DNA of 64,000 nt from Dimorphilus gyrociliatus (taxonomy: Eukaryota; Animalia; Annelida), in NCBI GenBank assembly GCA_904063045.1, contig CAJFCJ010000005.1:2536165-2600164 (forward strand), written 5' to 3'. Shown in pieces: positions 35,557 to 56,596 of the stretch. The translations under genes and the position numbers were made by a program. The notes below the pieces were generated by a model. It was given only the letters and a program-made list of their open reading frames with translations, was not told the DNA's origin and did not search any database. Numbering within the stretch: position 1 is the stretch's first letter; each line of letters opens with the position of its first letter.

Positions 35557-37092
35557 ATGGCCTCTTTTCATTTTTCCGATAGTGATGAAGATAATGAATG
35601 CGAAATATGCGGCGACACGTGGAACGAAGAAAATTTAAAGAGACTTCCATGTCAGCATTCTTTCTGTCTGGAATGCTTGCCAGATATCCAAACGGATAGT
35701 ATGATAACATGTTCTGTCTGTAATCTGAAGGTGGAAGCTACTAAGGAAGACAATATCGACTTGCCAAAAAATTTGAAAACCTTATCTACGGAGAATGACA
35801 ATAAGGATAAAAAATGCTTGAAACACAATAAGGATTTAGTCCTACCTTTGCTTTTTTGCTCAACATGTAGAACAAAACTAATATGTGAAGGTTGCTTAGA
35901 TATTGATCACTTTACGCCTGAATGTAAAGTAATAACGTATAATTCAATAAAGAAAAGAATTGAAGAATGCAAAGATGCTATAAATAGTAACAAAGATGCC
36001 GCAACTAATAACGAAAATACTCTTTTACAAAAGATTAAAGAATATAAGATGGCATGCTATTCGAAAATTGATGCAGAATTTCAAAATATGGAAGAAAAGG
36101 TGAAATACTTTTATAAAAACAGGCAAATGATTTTGAATTATTATCTTGACGACGTCGATAATAATACTATTGATAAGATGGAATTAGAGAAGAGTCTAAT
36201 GAAATTATCCCAACAGACTTTAGTTATGAAAAAGCCTCCAGAAGTATCTTTAGCATTTGAACTAGAAGCTAATTTTTCCGAAGATTCTATTGTTAGTAAT
36301 AATAGCTTTAGTAGAGACCTTATTAAATTGCAAAAAATTGACAAGTGGTTATCTCTCACATCGTTTATCACTAATGAAGGAATCTATTATCTTCGTGATA
36401 CGTGTTTTATAGCGGAAAGTAACGATTTCCTATATTTCAAATCATTTTCTGATCTCTCCAATTTAAAGATACCATTGAATAGGGACGTCAATGCATTTTG
36501 TATGACAAAAAATTATATATATGCAATAGGTGGATTGAAATCTTCTGGTGGACCATTACTCTACAGTGAAAGGACATCTCTTCAAAAACAATTTAACTTT
36601 AAAATATTAAGTGAGAAACAGTATTTTTCATTGAAAGCTATTGAATGTGAGAACAATCAAAGATATATTATTGCCAAGGATATCGATCAAACTATTTCCT
36701 TTTTTATAAATGAAAAATTCAAATGGAAATTTTGTTCTCCGTTAGCAAAATTTTTTATACAAGGAAACGGTAATCCTATAATATGTACTCAACAGAGAAA
36801 AATCTTAACATTCAATAAAAACACAGGCTCATATTCAGAAGATAATTTTGATTTTTCACAAGAAATACAAGATATATATGATTTTTCACCAAATGGAATT
36901 CTAATCTTATGTAATGAAAATACAAGTGACAAATCTACAAGACAATTATACTTATTCGATTATAATTTTAATATAAAACAAAGACTTATTACTTGTAGAG
37001 AATTTTTAGGTGCAACAGATTCAGGCCTAATTTGTGTTTCATGTTTCGGGAATAATACTGAAATAACCTTGTTTAGATTTAGTAAACAATAG
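35557..37092 (+). CDS. TRIM-like RBCC + propeller
   Basis: RING CEICGDTW..RLPCQHSFCLECL..CSVC; B-box CLKH..CSTC..ICEGCLDIDHFTPEC; propeller FITNEGIYY. Confidence 0.92.
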   Translation: MASFHFSDSDEDNECEICGDTWNEENLKRLPCQHSFCLECLPDIQTDSMITCSVCNLKVEATKEDNIDLPKNLKTLSTENDNKDKKCLKHNKDLVLPLLFCSTCRTKLICEGCLDIDHFTPECKVITYNSIKKRIEECKDAINSNKDAATNNENTLLQKIKEYKMACYSKIDAEFQNMEEKVKYFYKNRQMILNYYLDDVDNNTIDKMELEKSLMKLSQQTLVMKKPPEVSLAFELEANFSEDSIVSNNSFSRDLIKLQKIDKWLSLTSFITNEGIYYLRDTCFIAESNDFLYFKSFSDLSNLKIPLNRDVNAFCMTKNYIYAIGGLKSSGGPLLYSERTSLQKQFNFKILSEKQYFSLKAIECENNQRYIIAKDIDQTISFFINEKFKWKFCSPLAKFFIQGNGNPIICTQQRKILTFNKNTGSYSEDNFDFSQEIQDIYDFSPNGILILCNENTSDKSTRQLYLFDYNFNIKQRLITCREFLGATDSGLICVSCFGNNTEITLFRFSKQ

Positions 37093-39986: not shown

Positions 39987-40012
39987 CTTTATATATACTA
40001 TATATATATATA
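39955..40012. repeat. (CA)n/(TA)n microsatellite immediately upstream of a TRIM start codon
   Basis: Read directly from the sequence. Confidence 0.9.
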
Positions 40013-40023
40013 TGAGACAAGAC

Positions 40024-41538
40024 ATGGCGACCGGTAAATATTTTATTAATGAAAATGAATTAGAATGCTGTATATGTCTGGAGATATGGGTTAGAAAAGA
40101 TCCAAGAGTTCTTCCTTGTCAACATACATTCTGTTATGGATGTTTGGTTAAAACAGTAAAAAGAAATAGGTTAACATGTCCTCTTTGTCGTGTTAGGACA
40201 GTTTTACCGGATAAGGGAGTAAAAGGTTTACCAAATAACCTCTTGAAACATTCTCTAAAGTCTACCAATCACAACGAAATAGCTGAGAGATGTTTAAAAC
40301 ATGGAAAGGATATAATCTATCCAAAATTAGTTTGTTCAACCTGCAAAATTAAAAATCTATGCGAAATATGTATTGAGGACGATCATTCAAATGCGGATTG
40401 CGTTGTTAAGTCATTTAAACGTTTGTCAACAAATCTTAAGGACTTTTGGCTTAGCAGTAAACGGAGAGTAGATCAATTATGTTTGGATGTAAAAAATGAA
40501 ATTGAAAATCTAATGGAAACTGTCAAAGAGATTGAAGAATCCTGGCACATGATGGTAGATAAGAAGATTAAAGAGTTGAAACAAAAGGTGAAAGATTATG
40601 AGGAAAAGAAATTACATAATTTAAAATTAACTCTTTCAAAAATAGGAAATATCTTTATCAATGAAGATGAAATAAGAGAAGAAATTGATAATTTATCAAA
40701 AACTAAGCTAATGGCGAAAAATTCACCAAAACTCTTTACGAATTTGGATTTAGTTGAAAAAAAGATTGAGGAATTTAAAATATTCACCAAATACTTACAA
40801 ATTGGCTCATTTGAAAATATTTCAAAATCATTTTCCTATACAAATGAAGGATTATACGAATTATCCGAAAAGGATAATAGTACTTTAATCACTCTTAGAA
40901 AAGATGATACTATAAATTCTCAAGAGTTTTCATTAGATAAGCATATTTCGAGTTTTAATATTACTAAGAGCAATATTTATGGTTTAGACAAGGAGACTGG
41001 CGATTTGTTTTTATCAAGGAAACCCTTCAAGAAAGATATTATCTTGAATAAATTCAATGATAACTTTAAAGTATCTCTATTCACAGCCTATGATGATGAT
41101 AAAGATAATGAATATATATTTTGTCTTGATAATTTATCCAATTATCCATCAACTCTCTATTTCTACAGGAATAATTCTCTTAAATGGAAGAGAAATATCA
41201 GAAAGCGTTTCTATAATTTATGTATACTTTCTAATGGATGTTCGTTAGGAGTCACCGGATGTGAAATTTATAAATTTGATAAGAACAACGGAAATATTAT
41301 TGAACGTCAATGGTTAAACGTTTCCCCTTGTATTTCACTATCCTCCCTTCCTTTTCAAGGATTCTTACTAGCTGACCTACAGGATAGAAATATCAAACAA
41401 TACGATAATAATTTAAATATAATTAGCATATTTAACGTTGGAATTCATCCTATTTATTTGAAAATTACGAGCCATGGATTATTGTTTGTTCAAGATTTAG
41501 ATAATCCAAAGTTGTCCTATACATATAAAATTTATTAA
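40024..41538 (+). CDS. TRIM-like RBCC + propeller
   Basis: RING CCICLEIW..PRVLPCQHTFCYGCL..CPLCR; B-box CLKH..CSTC..LCEICIEDDHSNADC. Start set at MATGKY (40024). Confidence 0.92.
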   Translation: MATGKYFINENELECCICLEIWVRKDPRVLPCQHTFCYGCLVKTVKRNRLTCPLCRVRTVLPDKGVKGLPNNLLKHSLKSTNHNEIAERCLKHGKDIIYPKLVCSTCKIKNLCEICIEDDHSNADCVVKSFKRLSTNLKDFWLSSKRRVDQLCLDVKNEIENLMETVKEIEESWHMMVDKKIKELKQKVKDYEEKKLHNLKLTLSKIGNIFINEDEIREEIDNLSKTKLMAKNSPKLFTNLDLVEKKIEEFKIFTKYLQIGSFENISKSFSYTNEGLYELSEKDNSTLITLRKDDTINSQEFSLDKHISSFNITKSNIYGLDKETGDLFLSRKPFKKDIILNKFNDNFKVSLFTAYDDDKDNEYIFCLDNLSNYPSTLYFYRNNSLKWKRNIRKRFYNLCILSNGCSLGVTGCEIYKFDKNNGNIIERQWLNVSPCISLSSLPFQGFLLADLQDRNIKQYDNNLNIISIFNVGIHPIYLKITSHGLLFVQDLDNPKLSYTYKIY

Positions 41539-41948: not shown

Positions 41949-44900
41949 ATGCAAATGTATCTATTGTTATTCCTTTATTTTAACATTCTAAAAGGTTAGA
42001 TAAGTTGTTATTAATTCATTTGCGATATCTATACATCTGTTTGTACAGATTCTTCAAGTTTAGATTGTCCAAATTTGCCTTCGCCTTGGCGAAGTTTTAA
42101 GACTCGATCGAAATGCTACGCTACTAGAAGTTTGTCGGTTGGAGAAAGAACATATGAAAGAGCTAAAAGTATCTGTTCAAGTGAATTGAACGATGGATTC
42201 ATTGCCGATGCTGAATACGAGTCGTTAAGTGAATTTGCGGCTAAAGGAATAGATTTTGTTTTAGACAATTTTAACATTCCTAAGGATATTACTTGGAATG
42301 GTAATCCAGCGGCTGGTTTCTTTATTGGACATTCCTCGAGCAATAACAATGGAAATATCGAACACCGATGGCTGTCTGGAAGGGTTATGACAGTAGAACT
42401 TCAGGGACCTTCGACGGACGGTCCTGTTATAGTAGTTGTTAGTTCTAACCCGTAATATAATTAAATAATTAGTAACAGTGAATCATAGATATAACTTTTC
42501 TTTACAGAGAAGTAGCCGCTTTTTATACAGGAGAACCGGAATCGAACGTTGGGTCGGTTATTTGTCAAGTTCCTTCAACATTACAATGTCCAACAAATAT
42601 ACCGTCTGGATGGCTTGGATTTAAGACAAATAAGAAGTGTTATATAGCACGTAAGCTCGATGTTAATGAAAGAACATTTTATAAAGCTAAAGATATCTGC
42701 GAAAGTATCGACGGTATGAAATTGGCAAACCTAGAATTTGAAACGGAAATACTATTTAGATTTGTTCCATTCGTTAACGATAATATTGGCAGTTTTGATC
42801 CAACCATTGAAATAGAAGGACAAACTCTACCAGCTTTCCATTTTGATTATGAAACTCCCATAAAAAATATTTTTCAATGGCCAAGCGGTAAAGCTTTAAT
42901 TGATTCGAGAATTAAGACTGATCCTTCAAATTTTCATCTTGGTCTAGTAGTCGCACAGTAAGGAATTTGTATATTTAATAACCGTTGAGCATTTAACCAA
43001 TAGTAATTGCCATTTCTCCGAAAAACAGAAACACTTTTGGCTATCTGTCTCTCTTGGAAGAAACTAATATAAGAGGAGTTATTTGCGATATGGAACAATC
43101 TTCAGATCCTCCTGATAGTAAATATATGATATAAGCAATTAAAAATCTTTGTTACATAGATATTTACTAATAGCCGCCTCAGAGCTAAAATGTCCGTCAG
43201 TTGGAGACGAATGGAAGACATTTCAAACAACATCTAAATGCTATGCCATAAAATATTTAACAACTGGGGAGAGGACATATAATCAAGCGAAATCTATTTG
43301 CGAATCAGGTTCTCTTAGTGGAAACATTGCCGATTTAGAGTATGAAGATTTGGAGGAAATTATAGGGAGATTGGTAATTCACACTAATAATGATCCTTCC
43401 ATTACAAAAGGTATAGATGTAGATGGAGTCGACAGTGCAGGATTCTTTATAGGACATGAAATAGTTAATAATGGCCAGAATGAGTACTATTGGCAAAGTA
43501 ATCGTGAAATTCCTCAATTTGTTATAGAGGGACCAAAGACAAACAGACTAATTGCAGTTGCAAATTCCAATCAGTAATCATATAATAAAATTGTATAAAT
43601 AATTGAAATATATTAAATTGGGATAACTATTTTACAGGGGTCATACTAAATTCTACACAGGTGCTCAAGAATCGAGTGTAGGAGCGGTTCTATGTGAAAT
43701 TCCAGCAGAAATTGAATGTCCGCAATTTCAAGGATTTCTACATTTTCAAACAAACAGAAAATGCTATTTTACACGTAAATTAGAAGATATTGAAAGAAGT
43801 TTTGCGTATGCTAAGCAAATATGCGAAAGTAGAGAAAATTCAGCATTGGCAAATTTATACGCTGAAACGAATTTACTATATAATCTTGTTCCACTTGTCA
43901 ATGATAATCCATCGGATTTTGACAATACGATTCTACTTAAAGGAAAATCGAAACCTGGTTTCTATTTCGATTATACTGTTGCTGCTCCAAAAGTTTACCA
44001 CTGGCCAGGCAATATAGATATAGATATGGAGACGATTAATGACTCTCAGACAAGTACACATCTCGCCCTGGTGGTAGATTCGTAAGGATTTCCTACTTAG
44101 AATTTTTATATATTCTCTATAATATCTTATATTTTGAAGTTCGTCATTCGGATATTACAGCGCTTTTGAGGAAAGTGAAATAAGGGGAGTGCTCTGCGAA
44201 ATAGACCCTTCCATACGTAAGCCTGAGTTATAGGTTTCTTTCTTTTTTATTTATTCAAAAATCTTTTAGCTGGAAATGAACTCTCCTGTCCCGATTTACC
44301 TTCGGGTTGGTATAGTTTCCAGAGTAAGAATAAATGCTACGCTACCAGATTTTTAAACTCGGCTGAGAGGAGTTACGAACAAGCAGAAACGATATGTAGC
44401 AATGAATTGGAAGACGGCCATATTTTGGACCCAGAATATGAAGATTTAAATGAACTTTCTCAACTTGGAATACGTTTTGTTAAGACAGTTACGCATTCCA
44501 TATCCAGAGACGTCAACTTGAATGGAATTAAAGTTGCGAGTTTCTTTATAGGACATAAGTCTATCACGGTTGACAGTCAAGTAGAATATCAATGGCTTAG
44601 TGGAAGACCCGTTCCGTCGTCTATTAATATTCAAGGAACCGTTAGAACATCTCGTCTTTTTGTATCAGCCAATGATAATCCGTAAGTAATTATTGACTTG
44701 TCAATAAATGAAAGGTCTTTAAACTTCGTTGTGCACAGAAATGGAGCCGAATTTTTTACTGGAGTGCAGGAATCAAATATTGGAGCAGTTCTTTGTCAAA
44801 TTCCAGCTCTGTTGCAATGTCCTGACGAAACAATAAATGGTTGGTTAAGTTTTAAAACGAATAAAAAATGCTACTTGGTAAGAAATCTAGAAAGCAACGA

Positions 44901-45978
44901 AAGAACAATGGAAAAGGCAAGAGATGCCTGCCAAAGCGTTCCCGGTATGAAACTAGCCGACTTAAGAGAGGAAACGGAACTCCTTTACCAACTTGTACCT
45001 TTGATTTTGTTGAATTCTAGTAGTTTTACAAATTCAATTCAAATTAACGGACAAATGAGACCTGGATTCTATTTTGATTATATAATATCAAATGCTAATC
45101 AATTTTCATGGCCGAATGGAGAAACTATTGCTTCAGATTACATTGATACAACACAAGGAAATACCCACGCAGCCTTAGTTGTTGATGGGTAATGATAACA
45201 CTACTTATTTAAATATGATTTATATTAATGTTTGCTATAATTTGCAGTAATGTTTTCGGATATTATCATTCATTTGCAGAGAGCTCAATAACTGGTGTAA
45301 TCTGCGATTTAGAATCCTCCTCCGGTCAAGGAGATCCACACATGCGCCATTACATTAAGAAATACGGACGTCACATCTGCTACGACCTAACAGGTAAACG
45401 CGGAGACGAATTTATCATGTATACAGATCCTTCTACAAACACTATGGTACTGGGAAAACTCCGAGACGACTTTTATTTCGGTAGTGTAATAATACAAAGT
45501 TCTTTTTACAATAAAACAATTTCGGCTGACAATTTATGGAAAGTTGGCGAATGGTTGAATACACTGTATATACGAGTTGAAGCTATTCATAAAGATGAAA
45601 TATCGCTCACTATAAAAAAGTATAACCCAACTGTGCTAATTATTACAAAAAGAAGAAATACCGCCGGTTCTAATTACGTTAATATTCGTATTGGTGAAAT
45701 GGACGAATTAAATTCCCATGGAATATTCGGTAATTAATTAATTAATTAATACTCTATATTTATATTATTTTAAAGCATAAAATATAATTTAAGGTGATAT
45801 TTCGAAGAAAAACTACATCTTTTACGAAAGTATACAAACTCATTCAAAAAGTTCAATAAGTATTGAAGGAAAACTATTCGACGCTCAACTTATTAAAAGA
45901 GATGGACAGTCTTGTTGGTTTTTATCGCCTGATGCCGCTTTTTATCCTAAAAACGTTTTAGACTATTTAAGAAACTAA
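41949..45978 (+). CDS. Secreted protein: signal peptide + six divergent C-type-lectin-like domains (A-B cassette x3) + GDPH + ITI heavy chain C-terminal-like domain; 11 exons
   Basis: Exon 1 MQMYLLLFLYFNILK (41949-41994), intron 41995-42048. Repeated CP..W..F.T..KCY..ERTY..A..IC..G.LA..FFIG..W.SG..GxV(L/I)C(Q/E/D) units with introns at equivalent positions. GDPH at 45330-45341, followed by ICYDLTG..TDP..YFG..HGIFG; last exon 45794-45978 ends ..SCWFL..DYLRN*. Confidence 0.8.
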
Positions 45979-46684: not shown

Positions 46685-48250
46685 ATGATGGCTTCGAAAA
46701 AATTCTTTATTGATGAAGAAGAACTTTGTTGCGCAATTTGTTTGGATTTATGGATAGAGAAGGACAATAGGGTATTACCTTGTCAGCATACTTTTTGTTT
46801 AGAATGCTTAGAGAATATCTCTAACAATTCTATTATAAAATGCCCTACTTGTACGAAATCTTTCATCTCTCCGATTGGCGGTGCAGTAAATCTTCCAAAA
46901 AATCCTTTGAAGCACGCTCTACAGAAAGATGTAAATAAGGAGAAACTTTGTACCAAGCACGAAAAAACAGCTATTACGCCCATATTCGTTTGTTCAACGT
47001 GTAGGGAAGAGAACATTTGCGAAGATTGCTTTCAGCTTGATCATAGTCCGTCTAAATGCAAATTAATATCGTTAAATCATTTAGAACAGAATAATACTAT
47101 ATTTAGAAACGAATGTCAGAATATCCTGGATGAACAGATGACTAAGGAGGAAGAGAATAAGATGAGATTACACAACTATGTCATTGAGTTGAAAAACGAA
47201 TGTTTAGCAAAAATTGATAAAGTTGTCAATAAGTTAGAGGATGAAATTATCAGATTCTACGAATATAAAATGGCGTCTTTAATGAGGATATCAGAAAAGT
47301 TGAATGATAAATTTGTTGATGAATCAAAAATCAAGGAAGATATTAAAGAATTATCGTATTTAAAGTTAATAGAAGATAATTCACCTATAATATCTATTGA
47401 TTGCCGATTAATTAGGAGTAATTCAAAGAAAGATATTACAAAAATACATAAGGTTAATACTTTTGAAATATTAATGGAAAAGTTCTTTTTAACCGATGAA
47501 GGACTTTACGAATTGTTAGCGGAAGTCTATCTGAAAGATGAAAATCAACTTTCTATGATCTACTTTCGCGAGCGAAATGACAGCGAACCTAAAGTGTTCT
47601 TTCTGGATAAATTAATAATGAAGTTCGTTGTGACTGATAGAAATATATACGCTTTATCAGCCATCGATGGTTCTTTATTAAAATGTTCTAAAGCTGATCA
47701 TCATCAACTGGAGTTTGATACTCTATTCGATTCCGAAGCTAAAATGAAGGTTATCGACGAAAAAACCTTTTCGTATTTTGATAAAACTTCAACTAAACTC
47801 TTTGCAACTGAAGATAAAGATAACCACGAATACGTTCTCACTTACGAAACATTCGATATAAACGTAATTTTCTTCTTTGAAGATAATTCTCTTAAATGGA
47901 CAAAAAAGATATTTAATCATGTAGAAAATTTTTGCCTTATGGGTAATGGTTCAATAGTAACATCATTTGGAAATCAATTAACCATTCTTGATAAGAATAG
48001 CGGAAAAGATTTACATATCTTAAAGTTAAATAACTTTGCTATATCCACAATCTGCTACTTGAAAACAGGTAATCTCATTATTCAAACGGATGAACTATCG
48101 GAATTGAAACTTTTCACCAACGATTTAAAATTTCGTCAAAATCTTCATCTTCATAGCGAACGAAAGTGTAAAGGAGTTACTAAATCCGGTTTACTCTGTC
48201 TAAATTCCAGTGTATATAAAAACGTTATTCACCTATACAAATTAATTTAG
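46685..48250 (+). CDS. TRIM-like RBCC + propeller
   Basis: RING CAICLDLW..VLPCQHTFCLECL..CPTC..PIGGAVNLPKN; B-box CTKH..CSTC..ICEDCFQLDHSPSKC. Confidence 0.92.
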   Translation: MMASKKFFIDEEELCCAICLDLWIEKDNRVLPCQHTFCLECLENISNNSIIKCPTCTKSFISPIGGAVNLPKNPLKHALQKDVNKEKLCTKHEKTAITPIFVCSTCREENICEDCFQLDHSPSKCKLISLNHLEQNNTIFRNECQNILDEQMTKEEENKMRLHNYVIELKNECLAKIDKVVNKLEDEIIRFYEYKMASLMRISEKLNDKFVDESKIKEDIKELSYLKLIEDNSPIISIDCRLIRSNSKKDITKIHKVNTFEILMEKFFLTDEGLYELLAEVYLKDENQLSMIYFRERNDSEPKVFFLDKLIMKFVVTDRNIYALSAIDGSLLKCSKADHHQLEFDTLFDSEAKMKVIDEKTFSYFDKTSTKLFATEDKDNHEYVLTYETFDINVIFFFEDNSLKWTKKIFNHVENFCLMGNGSIVTSFGNQLTILDKNSGKDLHILKLNNFAISTICYLKTGNLIIQTDELSELKLFTNDLKFRQNLHLHSERKCKGVTKSGLLCLNSSVYKNVIHLYKLI

Positions 48251-48373: not shown

Positions 48374-49924
48374 TCATTCAGTATTTGGTTTATAGGTCAC
48401 TTCGATTAATGCTAGACTATCTTCGTTGTATAAAGACATACCAAATTTACCAGTTCTAGTTAATCCAACGATACTGTACTTACAATCGATTTCAATCTCT
48501 TTCTTAAAATTTAGATTAAAATCATAAATATAATTGAATTTCTTATTATTTTCTCTATCGAACCATACAAGTAAAAATCCATTTTTCGGGAATGTAAGTA
48601 ATTGTTCTACATCGTTGCAGTTCATTCGTCTAATGCCTATTCCAGATAATTTATCAAGTAAAACTAATTGGTCTTCATGTTTAATAAGGCAATTTCCATT
48701 TTCAAGAATACAAGCCTTTGAACAATAATATTCGTCATTTTGCCAAACGCATTCATCGTTTGAGAAAAAATACAGGATATCATTTTCATCTTTAGTTAGA
48801 ATGTATCTATTAAATTTGCCGTCTTCAATTGCATTTAGTTGGAAATATTCATTATTAGAAAGGACTTTTAATGATATTCTCTTTTTAAATGGTTTCTCAG
48901 CCATAAGTAAATGTCCAGTTTCGTAATCGATACAATAAAGATAATTATCTGTAACAACCAAAGCAGAAACCTCTTTCTCCAAATAAAATTTTACAGTATC
49001 TTTCCGAGAGGAGAAAGGTAAAAATACCAAACAAGACATTTCAAGTCCTGGTTTGCTTTCAAAGCTTCTATCAATATAATAAAATCCTTCGTCAGTTAAG
49101 CACAATGAATATTTCGGTAATTTGTCAAACTTTTTCAGCAATAAGCATTTATCAATCTCATTGTTCGGAAATGATTGATATTCTATCCCAAAATCATAGT
49201 TTATATCTAAGACTCTACTACCTATTTCAACATATTTTTCTTCAGAAATAGCTTTTAAAAGATCATTTGCTTCAGTTTCTTTCAGAAATATATTTTGAAT
49301 ATCAATATCTGAGAATCTTAATACGTCCTCCCTTTTGTCAAATAGCTTATGAACCTTATGTCTTAGGGAATCCATTTTTGAAGACAAAATTTGTAACCAA
49401 TTCATTTCAATTTCTTCCAAAGTTTCCAAAATTTTAGTCTTCTCTTTTTCATTTTTTTCTCTTAAGATTTTAATTTGCGGCAACAATCTTTCTTTCATTC
49501 CCTCTAATTTCTTTTTAAGACATTTGACTAAGGCAATATTACACGTTTCTTTGCTGTGATTTTTCTCAAAACAAATTGGACATAAGTTCATCTTTTTACA
49601 GCTGGTACATGCCAATTCTGGCTGATAGATATCTTCTTGGTGTTCCTCGCAGAGTGTTTTATCTTCTTTCTCAATTATACAACTCAATTCGGTGGTGTGA
49701 AGAAATTCATTAACTGTTGAAGGTATCATGGTAATTTTGCGACAAAATGGACAAACAATAGTTCCATCCTTCATCCAATCTTCCAAACATTTACAGCAAA
49801 AAATGTGGTGACAATTGAGAGCCTTAGGGTTAGATTCAAGCCAAACATCCAAACAAATTGCACACTCAATTTTATCTTTTTTAACGTAATACTTAGAAGA
49901 CGTTGTTTTATCGCTCATTTTCAT
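48374..49924 (-). CDS. TRIM-like RBCC + propeller
   Basis: RING CAICLDVW..PKALNCHHIFCCKCL..CPFCR; B-box CEEH..CTSC..LCPICFEKNHSKETC. Start at MKMSDK (49924) or MSDK (49918). Confidence 0.9.
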   Translation of the reverse strand: MKMSDKTTSSKYYVKKDKIECAICLDVWLESNPKALNCHHIFCCKCLEDWMKDGTIVCPFCRKITMIPSTVNEFLHTTELSCIIEKEDKTLCEEHQEDIYQPELACTSCKKMNLCPICFEKNHSKETCNIALVKCLKKKLEGMKERLLPQIKILREKNEKEKTKILETLEEIEMNWLQILSSKMDSLRHKVHKLFDKREDVLRFSDIDIQNIFLKETEANDLLKAISEEKYVEIGSRVLDINYDFGIEYQSFPNNEIDKCLLLKKFDKLPKYSLCLTDEGFYYIDRSFESKPGLEMSCLVFLPFSSRKDTVKFYLEKEVSALVVTDNYLYCIDYETGHLLMAEKPFKKRISLKVLSNNEYFQLNAIEDGKFNRYILTKDENDILYFFSNDECVWQNDEYYCSKACILENGNCLIKHEDQLVLLDKLSGIGIRRMNCNDVEQLLTFPKNGFLLVWFDRENNKKFNYIYDFNLNFKKEIEIDCKYSIVGLTRTGKFGMSLYNEDSLALIEVTYKPNTE

Positions 49925-50632
49925 GAAATAACTCGGAAAACAAAAATCTACTAAATGGGTATTGAATAACCACAATGGTTATAATAGATATGTCATATGT
50001 TTAAACGCTTAAATTTATTTATAGCATGTAATTCTTACCGTCCTCTGATAGATAGTAGCTTTCCAAGTAGAATTTTTCTATTTTCGGTATGCAGACGGCA
50101 TTCCTTGATAAGCCATGTTATCATTCAATTATTAGTAGTAAACCGTTCAAGTAGTGTTCACTGAGAATTCTTCAGTGTGACTATTATTATTTCTAAATAA
50201 TTGTATCATAGAATATGCTTGGGCTAATGGATCAAAAGAAAATCAAGGGTTCTTTTCTATTGATGTTCAATTCATAAAAATGTAGATAATTAGGAGGAAT
50301 TTTATAAATGTTTGATACAAAATTTTTCGGACAATCGAAAATAAAAACTGGTAAATTGTCGGAAACGCCTCTAAGTAGGTAACTAAAAAAAAAGTTGATA
50401 AGACTCATCTAATTGGAACAGTTTAGTTAGATAAATAATTTGAAATAGTTCTCAGCCTAAAAAACATTCAATGTGTTACTTTGATGTCTACTGATTTTCT
50501 CTTGTCCATTTGTTGGCCAACTGTCCGATTAGTTTGTTCAAGTTTTCATATTTAAAGGGGAAAATTTTCTCTACCAGTTTTTTTATATAAGGTTTGAATT
50601 GTATCATTAAAATTATTTGAGAAAAGATTACA

Positions 50633-52153
50633 ATGGCTAATAGTAGATATTACATCGATGAGAAAGATTTACAATGTGGTATATGTTTAGAGGCGTGGCT
50701 TGATAAGGATCCCAGGGTTCTTCCTTGTCAGCATACGTTCTGTTTTGGATGTTTAAACGGAACTAGTCGGTTTAATTTTATAAATTGTCCAATGTGTCGT
50801 TTAAGAGTTCAAATTCCTAGTGGAGACGTTAATAATTTTCCAAAGAATCTATTTAAGAATGCTATTCAAACGCATATTATTGAGAAATGCTTAAAACACG
50901 ACAAACAAGTAATAAAACCGAAGATTGTTTGTCTAACTTGTAGAAGTGAAAATCTATGTGGATTGTGTCTAGATGACGATCATTCGGATTATTGTAGTAT
51001 AAAATCGTTTTTAAATGTTCAAGAAGCCGTTAAAGACTTTAAAGACGCTTGTCTTGAATTAGTTAACCAACATAATTCAGAAATTGATGATGAAGTAAAA
51101 AAATTAATGGATAAAATAAGTGAAAAAAAGAAATTATGGCAATCTTTAATTGATAAGAATGAAAGAGATCTAAAGACTAAAGTATTGAAATCTAAACAGA
51201 AAAAACAGGAAGTATCGTCAAGAATTTTGAAGAAATTAGAAAATATATTCATTGATCAAAATGATATAAAAGAAGATATAGCAAATTTCTTATCAACTAA
51301 ATTAACGGATAAAAATTCATTAAAGTTTGTTATTTATCCGGAGATTAATGATATTAATACAAGAAATTATAAAATCATTTCAAAGTGTATCTATACAACA
51401 GACTTTAATTTTGTCTTTGGTTATTTTTGCTATACAGACGAAGGGCTTTATGAATTATCTCACGATTCAACTGATAATGATTACGAAAAGAATGATGAAC
51501 TACCTGTTCTTTGTCTTCGAGAGAAGAACGATTCAAATCCTATAAAGTATACACTAAGCCATAGAATATCTAATTTTGTTGTTATTGATAGTTGTATATA
51601 TGGAATACAAACTAATGTAGGATCTTTATTAATCTGTAAAAAACCTTTCAAAAAGCATATTGAATTTTCAACCGTTTACCAAGAGAAGCAAGTATGGTTT
51701 ATCAACGCCTACGAAGATAACGAAGGCAATCGTTACGTTCTTACTTATGGTAATTCTTACAAAACTCATCTATGCTACTTTATTAATGACGAAATAAAGT
51801 GGGAAAAGAATTTAGTGGATTTTCCAATGGACGCCTGTATACTTTCCAACGGATATGTTGTTATAGGAACAAATTCTCAATTTCTCGTGTTCAATAAAGA
51901 CGACGGAAGGGTTAAAGCTGTAGAAATAAGGGGAAAAATAGCAAAAGTTTCTCTTTGTCCCCTGCATACTGGTGGATTTTTAATGACAGATGACAATTTA
52001 CCAAAACTTAAACAATATGATAATTTAATTAACTATGTTAAAGATATTTACATTGACGTTCATCCAGACATTTGTAGAACTACAAAATCTGGTATGCTCT
52101 TTTTGAGACCATCAACCGAAGTTATAAATGCAAGATTGTATAAGCTAAAATAA
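50633..52153 (+). CDS. TRIM-like RBCC + propeller
   Basis: RING CGICLEAW..PRVLPCQHTFCFGCL..CPMCR; B-box CLKH..CLTC..LCGLCLDDDHSDYC. Confidence 0.92.
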   Translation: MANSRYYIDEKDLQCGICLEAWLDKDPRVLPCQHTFCFGCLNGTSRFNFINCPMCRLRVQIPSGDVNNFPKNLFKNAIQTHIIEKCLKHDKQVIKPKIVCLTCRSENLCGLCLDDDHSDYCSIKSFLNVQEAVKDFKDACLELVNQHNSEIDDEVKKLMDKISEKKKLWQSLIDKNERDLKTKVLKSKQKKQEVSSRILKKLENIFIDQNDIKEDIANFLSTKLTDKNSLKFVIYPEINDINTRNYKIISKCIYTTDFNFVFGYFCYTDEGLYELSHDSTDNDYEKNDELPVLCLREKNDSNPIKYTLSHRISNFVVIDSCIYGIQTNVGSLLICKKPFKKHIEFSTVYQEKQVWFINAYEDNEGNRYVLTYGNSYKTHLCYFINDEIKWEKNLVDFPMDACILSNGYVVIGTNSQFLVFNKDDGRVKAVEIRGKIAKVSLCPLHTGGFLMTDDNLPKLKQYDNLINYVKDIYIDVHPDICRTTKSGMLFLRPSTEVINARLYKLK

Positions 52154-53105: not shown

Positions 53106-54611
53106 ATGGCGACTGACAGCCTTCAATTTGAAGAAAGTGCTCTCGTTTGTAGTCTGTGTTTGGATTTTTGGGTTGAAAATGATCCGAGGGTTTTACCATG
53201 TCAACATACGTTTTGTTTTCAATGTTTAAAAATGTCTCCAAGCAATATTTTAACCACTTGTCCAGTTTGCCGTACGAAAGTAAACATTAGGAAGGAAAAT
53301 ATTAGTAATCTACCTAAAAATATATTAGCCAATTCGCTAAAAGAATCATCAAGGATGAGATTAAAGAATACAACAGTTTGTAAAGAGCACAATCAAGTCT
53401 TATGCAAACCGAAGCTTGTTTGTAAAACTTGTAAGGAATATAATATTTGCGAAGAATGTCTCAATGATTCTCATAAAAATTGTCAAATTCGCCTATTCGA
53501 ACATTTAAATAGAGAGACGAGACTATTAAAGAAAAGATGGGAGCCTGTATTAAATAGAATAGAATGTAATTTAAGAAAAAATGCAAAGAATTTCAAAATG
53601 GAATTGAATGAAATTGAAATGAAATTTCGAAAAAATTTCATAAAAATCAGAAATGAATTAGAACGAAAAGAAGAAACAGAATTAAATAAAATAAAATTAA
53701 TGAGAAATAGGCTTAAAGGTGAATTTTATAGAATGAAAGATTTAGAGAGAGAGATAGAGAATTTTAAAAATGACTCTAAATTTTCATATACAATTCCAAA
53801 TGTTGAAATTGAATTAAATCTATCAGAAAATTGCGCTAATACTAGACAAAATAAAGTATTAGTCAAGATCCAAGAATTCCATAATTTGGATTGCGATATA
53901 TCTTTTACAGATATTGGTATTATTAAATTATATTCAAATCAAAACAATCAACAATACTTTCGTATTGAATTTGAAAATTCTGAAGTAAAGGAAATACCTG
54001 TTAATCATACTATCAACACGTTTGCAGCTAATAAAAATTTTATCTATACTTCTAGAGTTCATCCTTATATAAGTTTGACAAAATGTTCTATAAATTCAAT
54101 GGCAGATGGATATCATTTTGAAATTATTGATAATTTCTACGAATTGGTTGGTAGGAACATCGGATTTATTGCGTCAGATAACGATTACGATTCATTTTTA
54201 TATATCTTTGCAAAATTTGGAGATCTTTACTTTAAACTTTATAAAAATGGTGAAAAGATTTGGTATCAAAGGTTTAAAATGAATCTTGTTGATTGTTGTT
54301 TCCTTAATAATGGTAATATACTATTGGCCGGCGAAGATTATTTACAAGTATTACATAAAGACAATGGTGAAAAGATCTTTGAAAAGAATACGCAACCAAA
54401 AATTCAATCTATAACATCAGTGCCAAACAACGGATTCATGTTAACAAGATACCAAGAACAACTTATCTATATCTATAATGATTGTTTTCATTTAAGTAAG
54501 ACAATTGAAATTGATTTTTTCCCATCCAAAATTCAAATGACAAACTCATTCAAACTTTTAATTCAAAATTTAGATTGTCCATTAACAGCTGTATTATACA
54601 AATATATATAG
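53106..54611 (+). CDS. TRIM-like RBCC + propeller
   Basis: RING CSLCLDFW..PRVLPCQHTFCFQCL..CPVCR; B-box CKEH..CKTC..ICEECLNDSHKNC. Confidence 0.92.
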   Translation: MATDSLQFEESALVCSLCLDFWVENDPRVLPCQHTFCFQCLKMSPSNILTTCPVCRTKVNIRKENISNLPKNILANSLKESSRMRLKNTTVCKEHNQVLCKPKLVCKTCKEYNICEECLNDSHKNCQIRLFEHLNRETRLLKKRWEPVLNRIECNLRKNAKNFKMELNEIEMKFRKNFIKIRNELERKEETELNKIKLMRNRLKGEFYRMKDLEREIENFKNDSKFSYTIPNVEIELNLSENCANTRQNKVLVKIQEFHNLDCDISFTDIGIIKLYSNQNNQQYFRIEFENSEVKEIPVNHTINTFAANKNFIYTSRVHPYISLTKCSINSMADGYHFEIIDNFYELVGRNIGFIASDNDYDSFLYIFAKFGDLYFKLYKNGEKIWYQRFKMNLVDCCFLNNGNILLAGEDYLQVLHKDNGEKIFEKNTQPKIQSITSVPNNGFMLTRYQEQLIYIYNDCFHLSKTIEIDFFPSKIQMTNSFKLLIQNLDCPLTAVLYKYI

Positions 54612-55087: not shown

Positions 55088-56596
55088 ATGGAGATGAATG
55101 AATATTTAGTAAAGGAGGATCCTTTAATATGTACAATATGCTTAGATTTATGGATTGGAAAGAATCCTAGAGCTCTACCTTGTCAGCATACATTTTGCGA
55201 AGATTGTTTAAAAACAACTATCGCTAATAAATGTATAGTTTGTCCTCAGTGCCGTTTACGAACTCAACTACCAAATGGCAAGATATCTGATTTACCTAAG
55301 AGTGTTTTCGATAGTAACATAACGATAAATTCAGTTCAATTTTGCTCTAGACATTATCAAAAGCTTATAGAACCAAGATTTGTTTGTCAAAGTTGTCATA
55401 TGGAGAATTTATGCGAAGAATGCCTCAATAATTGCCATACTCAAAGTACTTGCGTCATAAAATCGCACGAATCTATAAAACAAGATTCAAAAGAATTTAA
55501 AGATAACTGCCAAAAGCATATAAACCAATGGACAATTTCAATTAAAAATGAAATTGATTACCTTCAAAAGAAACTATTTGAATTAGAGAAAACTTGGTAT
55601 AGTACAATTAGAGAGAAATTAATAAAATTAAGAAATAGGATAGAGAAATACGAAGAAGATAAATTTGGAATACTTAAGACAATATCCGAAAATATTGAAA
55701 ATACATTTTTCGACGAAGATCTATGGATAGAAAGTATTAAAACTATTACAAATACTGTATTAATTGATAATAATAAATTGGAAATTCAAATTGATTACGA
55801 TATAATGGAAAGTGAATTGAATGATTTAAAAATAATTAAAACTTCTAGCGAATTAACTACAAACTCTCCATTTCATACTTGCTTCTCATTTGGTACAGAT
55901 GGATACTACGGTCTCAATCCTATAATAGATGCAAAGAAACTTCTTTATATATCAGGTTTAAATGTAAATAATAACAAACAATTCCAATTAGATAAATCTA
56001 TATCCAATTTTGTTATTTCGGACAATTATATTTATGCGTTAGAAGAGGAAACTGGTAGATTATTAAGTGCTAAGAAACCTTTTGATCAAATGATTAATTT
56101 AAATATTATCAATGAAGATGAAAAATTTGATAGTCTAGTTATCACAGAAAATATAGATATTGATGAAAGATATGCTCTTCTAAATACAACTGATTCAACT
56201 TTAATATTTTTAAATAATGATAAATTTATTTGGAAAAATACGTCGTTATCTTCTGCTATAGCTGATTTTTGTATTCTAAACAATGGAACTTCAATTGTAG
56301 CTTCAAAAAATCTTTTATTCTTTTTTGATAAAGAGGATGGTAACATTTTACGTAAAATCAAAACGGAAATATCCATTCCTATATCAGTTTGTTCTCATCC
56401 TAAATCTGGATTTTTTCAAGTTAATCTTAATGAATCTATTATAAAATACTATGACGATAATGTAAACTTGAACAGAGTGTATTTTGTCGGCTATAGTCCA
56501 TGGTGTATAAGATTTTCAAATTGTGATCAATTCTACCTTATTAACGATATTGTTATGTCTAATCATATCTTTTTCAGATTTAAATTAACTATTTAA
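55088..56596 (+). CDS. TRIM-like RBCC + propeller
   Basis: RING CTICLDLW..PRALPCQHTFCEDCL..CPQCR; B-box CSRH..CQSC..LCEECLNNCHTQSTC. Confidence 0.92.
   Translation: MEMNEYLVKEDPLICTICLDLWIGKNPRALPCQHTFCEDCLKTTIANKCIVCPQCRLRTQLPNGKISDLPKSVFDSNITINSVQFCSRHYQKLIEPRFVCQSCHMENLCEECLNNCHTQSTCVIKSHESIKQDSKEFKDNCQKHINQWTISIKNEIDYLQKKLFELEKTWYSTIREKLIKLRNRIEKYEEDKFGILKTISENIENTFFDEDLWIESIKTITNTVLIDNNKLEIQIDYDIMESELNDLKIIKTSSELTTNSPFHTCFSFGTDGYYGLNPIIDAKKLLYISGLNVNNNKQFQLDKSISNFVISDNYIYALEEETGRLLSAKKPFDQMINLNIINEDEKFDSLVITENIDIDERYALLNTTDSTLIFLNNDKFIWKNTSLSSAIADFCILNNGTSIVASKNLLFFFDKEDGNILRKIKTEISIPISVCSHPKSGFFQVNLNESIIKYYDDNVNLNRVYFVGYSPWCIRFSNCDQFYLINDIVMSNHIFFRFKLTI

What the first reader, a model, noticed from the sequence alone, without database searches (positions are those of the whole stretch)
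41949..45978. Unusual secreted protein: six C-type-lectin-like domains fused via GDPH to an ITI-heavy-chain C-terminal-like domain
Seen: hand splicing gives signal peptide, (A-B)x3 lectin-like domains, then SSGQ-GDPH (45330-45341) followed by ICYDLTG..TDP..V.GKL..YFG..HGIFG..CWFL..DY. Known: this pattern resembles the C-terminal propeptide of inter-alpha-trypsin inhibitor heavy chains (GDPHF..CF....G...DP..YFG..HGLLGQF..CW..DY). There, and in mucin VWD domains, the Asp-Pro bond is autocatalytically cleaved, and in ITIH the freed Asp is esterified to glycosaminoglycan. Normal ITIHs carry VIT+vWA N-terminally, not lectin domains. Inference: a self-cleaving lectin array that could be released or covalently attached to extracellular glycans (matrix, mucus, cuticle or microbial surfaces). 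I do not recognise this architecture from any described protein.
Basis: partly seen in the sequence, partly recalled or inferred. Interest (0 to 1): 0.8.

Follow-up and report, generated by a model that had tools for sequence, protein, structure and literature searches.

The report
Six-lectin-fold protein with ITIH-type self-cleaving tail

Summary
Window 41949-45978 (+) holds an 11-exon gene with GT-AG introns of 53-71 nt. Exon by exon it equals the public uncharacterised protein DgyrCDS3694 (CAD5114629.1, 1145 aa).

- **Architecture:** signal-like N-terminus, six domains (A-B)x3, a 6-residue linker, GDPH (45330-45341), then a 192-residue tail.
- **Pfam:** no hit to either part.
- **Family:** the tail occurs at 154 or more places in this genome. 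A/B-type domains occur only in this gene and four neighbouring ones.
- **Untested:** self-cleavage at D953-P954 is inferred. Glycan ligation is speculative. No RNA run was listed, so splicing is not read-supported.

This scan had already found the same lectin-tail fusion on other DNA of this genome (s1-081200, s1-081002, s1-081379). It is a new variant of known kinds, of moderate interest.

The parts
41949..41994 (+). Exon 1: start codon and a short hydrophobic N-terminus (probable signal peptide, residues 1-15)
   Evidence: The signal function is inferred from the hydrophobic stretch and from the classical signal peptides of paralogues.
42049..42451 (+). Exon 2: main part of lectin-fold domain A1
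   Evidence: Homologous to the folded paralogue A domain (37% identity).
42508..42957 (+). Exon 3: last strand of A1 plus main part of domain B1
43029..43117 (+). Exon 4: last strand of B1 plus linker
43174..43573 (+). Exon 5: main part of domain A2
43638..44081 (+). Exon 6: last strand of A2 plus main part of B2
44140..44216 (+). Exon 7: last strand of B2 plus linker (acceptor corrected from my first model)
44270..44681 (+). Exon 8: main part of domain A3
44739..45188 (+). Exon 9: last strand of A3 plus main part of B3
45248..45729 (+). Exon 10: last strand of B3, 6-residue linker, GDPH, and the first ~130 residues of the ITIH-C-like tail domain
45330..45341 (+). GDPH motif (G952-D953-P954-H955); predicted scissile bond D953-P954
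   Evidence: D 85%, P 90%, H 82% conserved in 94 family members; aligned to the DPHF of true ITI_HC_C; Pro aligned to the post-cleavage N-termini of FCGBP D10 and RGMB.
45794..45978 (+). Exon 11: last 60 residues of the tail domain (conserved CW and DY) and the stop codon

Best explanation
This is an intact gene of Dimorphilus gyrociliatus (DgyrCDS3694) for a secreted protein of 1145 residues. Six C-type-lectin-fold domains arose by tripling a three-exon A-B unit. Each domain carries two disulfides, and none has the canonical Ca2+/sugar site. A 6-residue linker joins them to a divergent ITI_HC_C domain, a VWD-like beta-sandwich that starts with GDPH.

Most likely mechanism, by analogy with ITIH heavy chains and GDPH-bearing VWD domains: in the secretory pathway the folded tail positions D953 so that its side chain attacks its own peptide carbonyl. 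This breaks the D953-P954 bond. All 26 cysteines are accounted for within domains, so no disulfide should bridge the two sides. The ~103 kDa lectin-fold array would therefore separate from the ~22 kDa tail, ending in a transiently activated (anhydride) C-terminal Asp. That Asp is either hydrolysed (plain pro-domain removal) or captured by a hydroxyl or amine of a matrix or mucus polymer (covalent anchoring).

Shown here: gene structure, domain identities, motif position and conservation, and family context. Inferred: secretion, cleavage and release. Speculative: covalent ligation, and what the lectin-fold domains bind.
For: Gene model and database identity.

Tail is homologous to ITI_HC_C:
- A profile built only from this genome's paralogues finds true ITIH-like proteins in 1.84 billion representatives. 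P0139 (VWA + ITI_HC_C) scores E 1.5e-14 and P0148 (ITI_HC_C) 1.5e-12.
- ITI_HC_C is the only Pfam family hit by more than one of 94 family members (7 members, best E 2.3e-18).
- hhalign against three true ITI_HC_C domains gives 99.1% probability, E 4.3e-19, over 206 columns, with GDPH on DPHF and both conserved Cys aligned.
- The AF2 model of residues 938-1145 has pLDDT 89.4.
- Its best ESM Atlas matches are ITIH2 (TM 0.80, 196 residues, 2.7 A), an ITI_HC_C cluster (0.69) and the VWD protein SUSD2 (0.56).
- Language-model features give ITI_HC_C clusters at 0.93-0.94.

Motif under selection: among 94 members with 24% mean column identity, D is kept in 85%, P in 90% and H in 82%. C968 is kept in 100% and C1125 in 99%.

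Lectin fold:
- The AF2 model of a paralogue A domain has pLDDT 92.3.
- The listed Foldseek hits (ranks 1-49) are all C-type-lectin-fold (CTLD) proteins, with probability 0.98-1.00.
- The A/B profile hits PLA2R and LY75 at E 1.5e-5 and CD69 at 2e-3 among PDB sequences.
- Atlas features give Lectin_C for 28 of 30 hits.

Chemistry precedent: GDPH cleavage yields an Asp anhydride, and ITIH3 is esterified through that Asp to chondroitin sulfate (PMC8267560). The ITIH GDPH lies in a VWD-like sandwich (PMC10880436).
Against: - Pfam finds neither Lectin_C, ITI_HC_C nor VWD in this protein, so the assignments rest on profiles, models and transitive links.
- No experimental or read-level evidence exists here for expression, splicing, secretion or cleavage. 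No RNA run was listed, and no transcript-derived fragment was found.
- The lectin fold was modelled on a paralogue A domain (24-37% identical to this gene's six domains), not on this gene's own domains.
- GDPH motifs are not always cleaved. Recombinant MUC2 GDPH stayed uncleaved (PMC10880436).
- Where cleavage occurs the anhydride may simply hydrolyse. No cross-link was found for FCGBP (PMC8267560).
- This gene and its close paralogues have His where 85% of the family has Gln three residues after the motif. The consequence is unknown.
- The known ITIH acceptor (bikunin chondroitin sulfate) is, to my knowledge, a vertebrate system, and no acceptor was looked for here.
Confidence: 0.6

Rival explanations
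1. The tail is a structural or binding beta-sandwich that is not cleaved. Alternatively, its cleavage only stabilises the domain as in FCGBP, without releasing the lectin-fold array or activating it for ligation.
For: In FCGBP, cleavage stabilises the VWD domain, the fragments stay together, and no covalent adduct was found (PMC10880436, PMC8267560). Recombinant MUC2 GDPH was not cleaved (PMC10880436). About 15-20% of family members lack an intact DPH yet persist.
Against: D, P and H are among the most conserved positions of a family with only 24% mean column identity. The motif sits at the very N-terminal edge of the fold, preceded by a low-confidence 6-residue linker. No cysteine is available for an inter-fragment disulfide: there are 26 Cys, four in each of six lectin-fold domains plus the conserved tail pair. 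If the bond breaks, the two parts should therefore separate, as they do in ITIH1-3.
Confidence: 0.22
2. Cleavage occurs but is ordinary pro-domain removal. The tail acts as an intramolecular chaperone or secretion aid, and the new C-terminal Asp is simply hydrolysed. There is no covalent glycan tagging.
For: Hydrolysis is the observed fate in FCGBP (PMC8267560). No bikunin-like acceptor was identified. The tail is attached to many unrelated, often short, front ends at 154 or more places, which fits a generic processing module.
Against: Nothing here argues against it. It is a sub-case of the best explanation and differs only in the fate of the activated Asp. ITIH1-3, the closest homologues, do use the Asp for an ester to chondroitin sulfate (PMC8267560).
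Confidence: 0.4
3. The gene model is an artefact: two adjacent genes fused by annotation, or a decaying pseudogene that is not expressed.
For: No RNA run was listed. The public model comes from an automated pipeline (EVM/PASA, PMC7854359), and I could not see its transcript support.
Against: Exon 10 encodes in a single open frame the last strand and final Cys of the sixth lectin-fold domain, the linker and 130 residues of the tail. The same arrangement is kept in four paralogues. All 11 exons are open in 29% GC DNA with consistent phases. All six domains keep the four Cys. A single-domain version of the fusion is conserved in another species at 69% nucleotide identity.
Confidence: 0.04

Closest known systems
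[quoted passage not shown]
   Same: Homologous C-terminal beta-sandwich (hhalign 99.1%; TM 0.80 to ITIH2). The DPH motif sits at the N-terminal edge of the domain. Both share a conserved Cys pair (C-[FY]-D ... C-W) and a GxxG segment before the last third. In ITIH the domain is removed at Asp-Pro and the Asp is esterified to chondroitin sulfate (PMC8267560).
   Different: There is no VIT or VWA domain in front; six lectin-fold domains stand there instead. The sequence is too divergent for the Pfam model. It belongs to a family with 154 or more matches in this genome and varied front ends, whereas the genome has one canonical ITI_HC_C match (C9:527658). The acceptor is unknown, and cleavage is untested.
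GDPH-bearing VWD domains (FCGBP, MUC2, MUC5AC, SUSD2, RGM family, BMPER)
   Different: The Pfam VWD model does not hit this locus. There are no C8/TIL modules. No strand or disulfide on the N-terminal side would hold the fragments together, whereas VWD fragments stay joined (PMC8267560). Sequence identity is 8-16%.
Multi-CTLD proteins (mannose-receptor family: PLA2R, DEC-205/LY75) and NK-receptor-type C-type lectin-like domains
   Different: The C2-C3 disulfide and the EPN/QPD and WND motifs are absent. The WIGL motif is replaced by GF[FY][IF]. There is no transmembrane segment, fibronectin or ricin domain. The array ends in a self-cleaving-type tail. A/B-type domains were found nowhere outside a five-gene cluster of this genome.
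Paralogues in the same genome: four (A-B)x1 + (G/Q)DPH-tail genes just upstream (C5:2524882-2535887) and a one-CTLD + tail gene on C24
   Same: Same fusion, same exon that joins the last lectin strand to the tail, 33-45% tail identity and 30-60% A/B identity.
   Different: This gene has the A-B unit three times (1145 aa against about 500 aa). Two of the neighbours have QDPH instead of GDPH.

Membership tests
ITI_HC_C domain (PF06668) | Score above Pfam's gathering cut-off (27 bits) | tested here: not met
   No hit at E<=1 on exon 10 or exon 11, and none at E<=0.1 on residues 938-1145 or the whole protein. Also no hit at this locus in a six-frame genome search at E<=10.
ITI_HC_C domain (PF06668) | Homology detectable by profile methods to bona fide members | tested here: met
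   The family profile finds P0139 (VWA+ITI_HC_C) at E 1.5e-14 and P0148 at 1.5e-12. hhalign gives 99.1%, E 4.3e-19, over 206 columns. Seven of 94 family members pass as ITI_HC_C, best E 2.3e-18.
ITI_HC_C domain (PF06668) | Same three-dimensional fold as the ITIH C-terminal domain | tested here: met
   Model with pLDDT 89.4. TM 0.80, 196 residues at 2.7 A to an ITIH2 model; TM 0.69 to an ITI_HC_C cluster. Both sides are predictions.
ITI_HC_C domain (PF06668) | Asp-Pro-His motif at the start of the domain and a conserved Cys pair | tested here: met
   GDPH at 952-955 aligns with the DPHF/DPHI of true members. C968 and C1125 align with their invariant Cys.
ITI_HC_C domain (PF06668) | Cleavage at Asp-Pro and ester link of the Asp to a glycosaminoglycan | not testable with these tools
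   Needs protein expression and mass spectrometry.
ITIH protein family (heavy chains as whole proteins) | VIT and VWA domains N-terminal to the tail | tested here: not met
   No VIT or VWA hit. The N-terminal 937 residues are six lectin-fold domains. The protein therefore shares a domain with ITIHs but is not an ITIH.
VWD domain (PF00094) | Pfam VWD model match | tested here: not met
   Seventy VWD matches in the genome, none at this locus or at the listed paralogues. No hit on the protein.
VWD domain (PF00094) | VWD beta-sandwich fold with GDPH at the equivalent position | tested here: met
VWD domain (PF00094) | N-terminal strand and inter-fragment disulfide that keep the cleaved halves together | tested here: inconclusive
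   The 14 residues before GDPH are modelled at pLDDT <50, and no spare Cys exists. However, only 14 upstream residues were included in the model.
C-type lectin-like domain (Lectin_C, PF00059) | Pfam Lectin_C match above cut-off (22.6 bits) | tested here: not met
   No hit on any exon or on the whole protein. Paralogues give only sub-threshold hits: 16 bits at E 0.021, and 14 bits at E 0.085.
C-type lectin-like domain (Lectin_C, PF00059) | CTLD fold | tested here: met
C-type lectin-like domain (Lectin_C, PF00059) | Canonical disulfides (C1-C4 and C2-C3; C0-C0' in long form) | tested here: inconclusive
   Four Cys per domain stand at the positions of C0, C0', C1 and C4. The C2-C3 pair is absent in all six domains. 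Pairing is inferred from position and was not measured.
Ca2+-dependent carbohydrate-recognition domain (functional C-type lectin) | EPN/QPD plus WND Ca2+/sugar-binding motifs in the long-loop region | tested here: not met
   No EPN, QPD or WND anywhere in the 1145 residues, and the long-loop region is shortened. Ca2+-independent or non-sugar binding is not excluded.

The most novel reading that the evidence does not exclude
In this worm the ITIH-type tail may have become a portable, self-contained 'cut-and-ligate' tag. More than a hundred different secreted proteins, among them this hexa-lectin-fold array, would use it to cleave themselves and to couple their new C-terminal Asp covalently to polysaccharide or protein of mucus, cuticle, cocoon or microbial surfaces. 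This would work without bikunin, and it would make protein-glycan esterification a general matrix-building or immune-tagging mechanism in an invertebrate.
Probability: 0.2. Interest if true: 0.8.

Novelty: new variant of a known kind. Interest (0 to 1): 0.55.

Why it matters
The Asp-Pro self-cleavage of ITIH heavy chains, followed by an ester link to chondroitin sulfate, is one of very few known covalent protein-glycosaminoglycan cross-links. It has been studied almost only in vertebrate ITIH/bikunin. Here the same domain is detached from VIT/VWA and fused to other cargo, in this gene a six-fold lectin-fold array. It has multiplied to 154 or more matches in a 78 Mb genome.

If the tail cleaves on its own, it is a natural, compact (about 190-residue) autoprocessing module. 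That would interest protein engineers and would help dissect the cleavage and ligation chemistry away from the ITIH context. If it also ligates, it would show a general way of anchoring recognition proteins covalently to extracellular polymers.

For genome annotation, the result shows that two large parts of an 'uncharacterised' protein invisible to Pfam can be assigned by family profiles and predicted structure.

Tried and rejected
- **Pfam on exons and protein:** Pfam on every exon and on the whole protein found nothing usable. A sub-threshold LCCL hit (20.4 bits, below the 22.6 cut-off, with no individually significant stretch) over the N-terminal part of A1 was rejected as noise, because fold and profile evidence point to a CTLD.
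- **PDB sequence searches for the tail:** a phmmer search gave only chance hits at E about 2. The profile search found nothing, and no chain in these PDB searches matched an ITIH C-terminal domain.
- **RNA evidence:** no run was listed.
- **Transcript-derived fragments:** a search for fragments crossing exon junctions found nothing.
- **Relatives of the lectin array:** only the protein itself was found. Exon-length relatives of the B domain were not found.
- **Published expression tables:** the tables of the genome paper use DgyrG numbers that I could not map to DgyrCDS3694, so this route was dropped.
- **Order of tripling and gene duplication:** a tree separates A from B types (support 92/89) but leaves the order open.
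- **Self-joined spliced model:** I did not search or fold a self-joined spliced model. Exons were searched by reference. For whole-domain work I used the public protein P0005 returned, or single-frame paralogues.
- **Rejected readings:** a fused-gene artefact, rejected because one exon spans the junction, and a canonical sugar-binding C-type lectin, rejected because the motifs are absent.
Full report
**Observation**

The window is AT-rich eukaryotic DNA (29% GC) from a 77.9 Mb genome. Between 41949 and 45978 on the + strand I derived an 11-exon gene with canonical GT-AG borders, introns of 53-71 nt and consistent phases.

A profile search of 1.84 billion protein representatives returned a 1145-residue public protein, P0005. 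It is CAD5114629.1 / A0A7I8VJ85, 'DgyrCDS3694', from the annelid Dimorphilus gyrociliatus.

Checked exon by exon, each in-frame exon translation lies in P0005 in order, with exactly one split-codon residue between neighbours. The total is 3438 nt, which is 1145 codons plus stop. The one difference from my first hand model is the exon 7 acceptor; the correct exon is 44140-44216.

The public model comes from an EVM/PASA pipeline (PMC7854359), and I could not see whether transcripts support this locus. When I asked for RNA runs, none was listed. A search for transcript-derived fragments crossing exon junctions found nothing. Splicing therefore rests on sequence logic and an independent annotation, not on reads.

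**The repeat**

The front 937 residues are three copies of a three-exon unit: A main part, then A last strand plus B main part, then B last strand plus linker.

- At DNA level the unit spacing is about 1100-1125 nt and the A-to-B spacing about 524-534 nt, at 63-80% identity.
- A1 matches A3 and A2 at 49% and 44% identity. B1 matches B3 and B2 at 51% and 45%. An A query also finds B domains (E 7e-12), so A and B are homologous.
- Each of the six domains has the same four cysteines, giving 24 of the protein's 26.
- A tree separates A from B types (support 92/89) but does not resolve whether the tripling came before or after the gene duplications.

**Are they lectin-like?**

Pfam does not say so. 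There is no Lectin_C hit on any exon or on the whole protein, and paralogues give only sub-threshold hits. Other evidence does support a lectin fold.

- One upstream paralogue encodes a complete A domain in a single open frame (L005:633-1097, 24-37% identical to this gene's six domains).
- Folded with an alignment of all A/B pieces, it gave pLDDT 92.3 and pTM 0.84.
- The listed Foldseek hits (ranks 1-49) in the PDB are all C-type lectin(-like) domains, with probability 0.98-1.00 and TM 0.46-0.57 by the query.
- A sequence profile of the A/B domains hits PLA2R and LY75 (E 1.5e-5), CD69 (E 2e-3) and further CTLDs among PDB sequences.
- Language-model features give Lectin_C for 28 of 30 nearest clusters.

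The fold is therefore a CTLD, but not a canonical sugar-binding one. There is no EPN, QPD or WND anywhere, the long-loop region is short, and the C2-C3 disulfide is missing. 'Lectin' here names a fold; the ligand is unknown.

**The tail**

Pfam finds nothing in exon 10, exon 11 or residues 938-1145. Homology to ITI_HC_C is nevertheless solid.

1. A profile built only from paralogues in this genome (alignment A1) finds true ITIH-like proteins. Among 279 hits at E<=0.001 are P0139 (VWA + ITI_HC_C by Pfam) at E 1.5e-14 and P0148 (ITI_HC_C, Pfam E 1.3e-17) at 1.5e-12.
2. Of 94 family domains scanned singly, ITI_HC_C is the only Pfam family hit more than once (7 members, best E 2.3e-18).
3. hhalign of A1 against three domains that pass Pfam's cut-off gives 99.1% probability and E 4.3e-19 over 206 columns. 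The three are the genome's one canonical ITI_HC_C match on C9, P0139 and P0148. The alignment runs from GDPH on DPHF through C-Y-D on C-F-D and the Gly-rich segment to C-W and D-Y.
4. The AF2 model of P0005:938-1145 has pLDDT 89.4 and pTM 0.85 and is all-beta. Its best ESM Atlas matches are an ITIH2 model (TM 0.80, 196 residues, 2.7 A), an ITI_HC_C cluster (0.69) and the VWD protein SUSD2 (0.56).

The first aligned model residue is 17, the Pro of GDPH. It pairs with FCGBP residue 4081 and RGMB residue 169, the first residues of the post-cleavage chains. This agrees with the published remark that ITIH GDPH motifs lie in a VWD-like sandwich not annotated as VWD (PMC10880436).

**Family and neighbourhood**

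The tail is a large lineage-specific family.

- The single exon finds 104 places in this genome at E<=10, 88 of them at E<=0.001. The profile finds 154 matches at E<=0.001, with only 150 of 276 candidates scored. That figure is a lower bound on places, although intron-split genes count twice.
- Many copies lie in tandem clusters, and most have front ends that Pfam does not recognise.
- Across 94 members with 24% mean column identity, D, P and H of the motif are kept in 85%, 90% and 82%. The two Cys are kept in 99-100%.
- A/B-type lectin-fold domains occur only in this gene and in four (A-B)x1 + tail genes just upstream of the window, at C5:2524882-2535887. They were not found in 5.8 billion database proteins.
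- A sixth gene, on C24, joins one more canonical CTLD to the tail. It has a counterpart at 69% nucleotide identity in assemblies of other sequencing runs. That level points to another species, so the fusion is probably older than this species.
- In all of these the last strand of the lectin fold and the start of the tail share one exon. This rules out a separate transcript for the tail.

This scan had already reported the same fusion on other DNA of this genome (s1-081200, s1-081002, s1-081379). My checks agree with those notes.

**Mechanism**

Shown here: the architecture, the homologies, the position and conservation of GDPH, and the cysteine accounting.

Inferred:
- The short hydrophobic N-terminus is a signal peptide. 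Paralogues have classical signal peptides.
- The folded tail promotes attack of the D953 side chain on its own carbonyl. This is the chemistry described for GDPH motifs (PMC10880436).
- The array and the tail then separate. The 14 residues before GDPH are unstructured in the model, and no cysteine is left to bridge the fragments.

Speculative: the resulting Asp anhydride is captured by a glycan hydroxyl, as in ITIH3-chondroitin sulfate, rather than hydrolysed as in FCGBP (PMC8267560).

I put about 0.9 on the domain assignments, about 0.6 on cleavage with release and about 0.2-0.25 on covalent ligation.

**Comparison and novelty**

The protein shares a domain with ITIHs but is not an ITIH, because it has no VIT or VWA domain. 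It has the VWD fold but is not a Pfam VWD. It has CTLD folds but not a canonical carbohydrate-recognition site.

I found no paper describing a CTLD array joined to an ITI_HC_C domain. The genome paper does not mention ITIH or lectins.

It is best filed as a new variant of known kinds: a new domain combination within a lineage-specific expansion of a known self-processing domain.

**Limits**

- No read-level evidence of expression was obtained.
- Both structures are predictions.
- The lectin fold was modelled on a paralogue.

Noticed in passing
window 35557-37092, 40012-41538, 46685-48250, 48374-49975 (-), 50633-52153, 53106-54611, 55088-56596: The lectin-tail gene is embedded in an array of single-exon ORFs of about 500 aa. 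The one read in full (40012-41538) starts with a Cys-rich RING/B-box-like region, so it may be TRIM-like. This is a second local gene expansion, on both sides of the gene.
   Followed up: no
L003 and L004 (G000:C5:2526765-2534015), just upstream of the window: Two of the four neighbouring (A-B)x1 + tail genes have nearly identical A and B domains, which indicates a recent duplication. Both carry QDPH instead of GDPH at the motif.
   Followed up: partly
L028:893-2090 (Logan contig of run SRR23372229) and L007:891-2124 (G000:C24): A one-CTLD + GDPH-tail gene on C24 has a counterpart in another sequencing project at only 69% nucleotide identity. It presumably comes from a related species, which I could not name.
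   Followed up: partly
G000:C14:355213-393378: A tandem cluster of about ten tail copies matches the family profile only from about position 34-43 onward. The GDPH-bearing start is therefore either on another exon or missing in this subfamily.
   Followed up: no
P0090 (833 aa, family hit): A database protein combines FLYWCH and MULE transposase domains with a piece of the tail domain. This is probably a merged gene model or a transposon insertion next to a family member.
   Followed up: no
L022:1333-2025 (G000:C9:527658-528128): This is the genome's only match to the Pfam ITI_HC_C model above its cut-off (49 bits). It has SDPHF at its start and is presumably the canonical ITIH orthologue, beside the 154-plus divergent tail matches.
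   Followed up: partly
residue 958 of P0005 (window about 45348-45350): Three residues after the motif, 85% of family members have Gln. This gene and its closest paralogues have His instead (GDPH-x-x-H). Whether this alters the cleavage chemistry is unknown.
   Followed up: no
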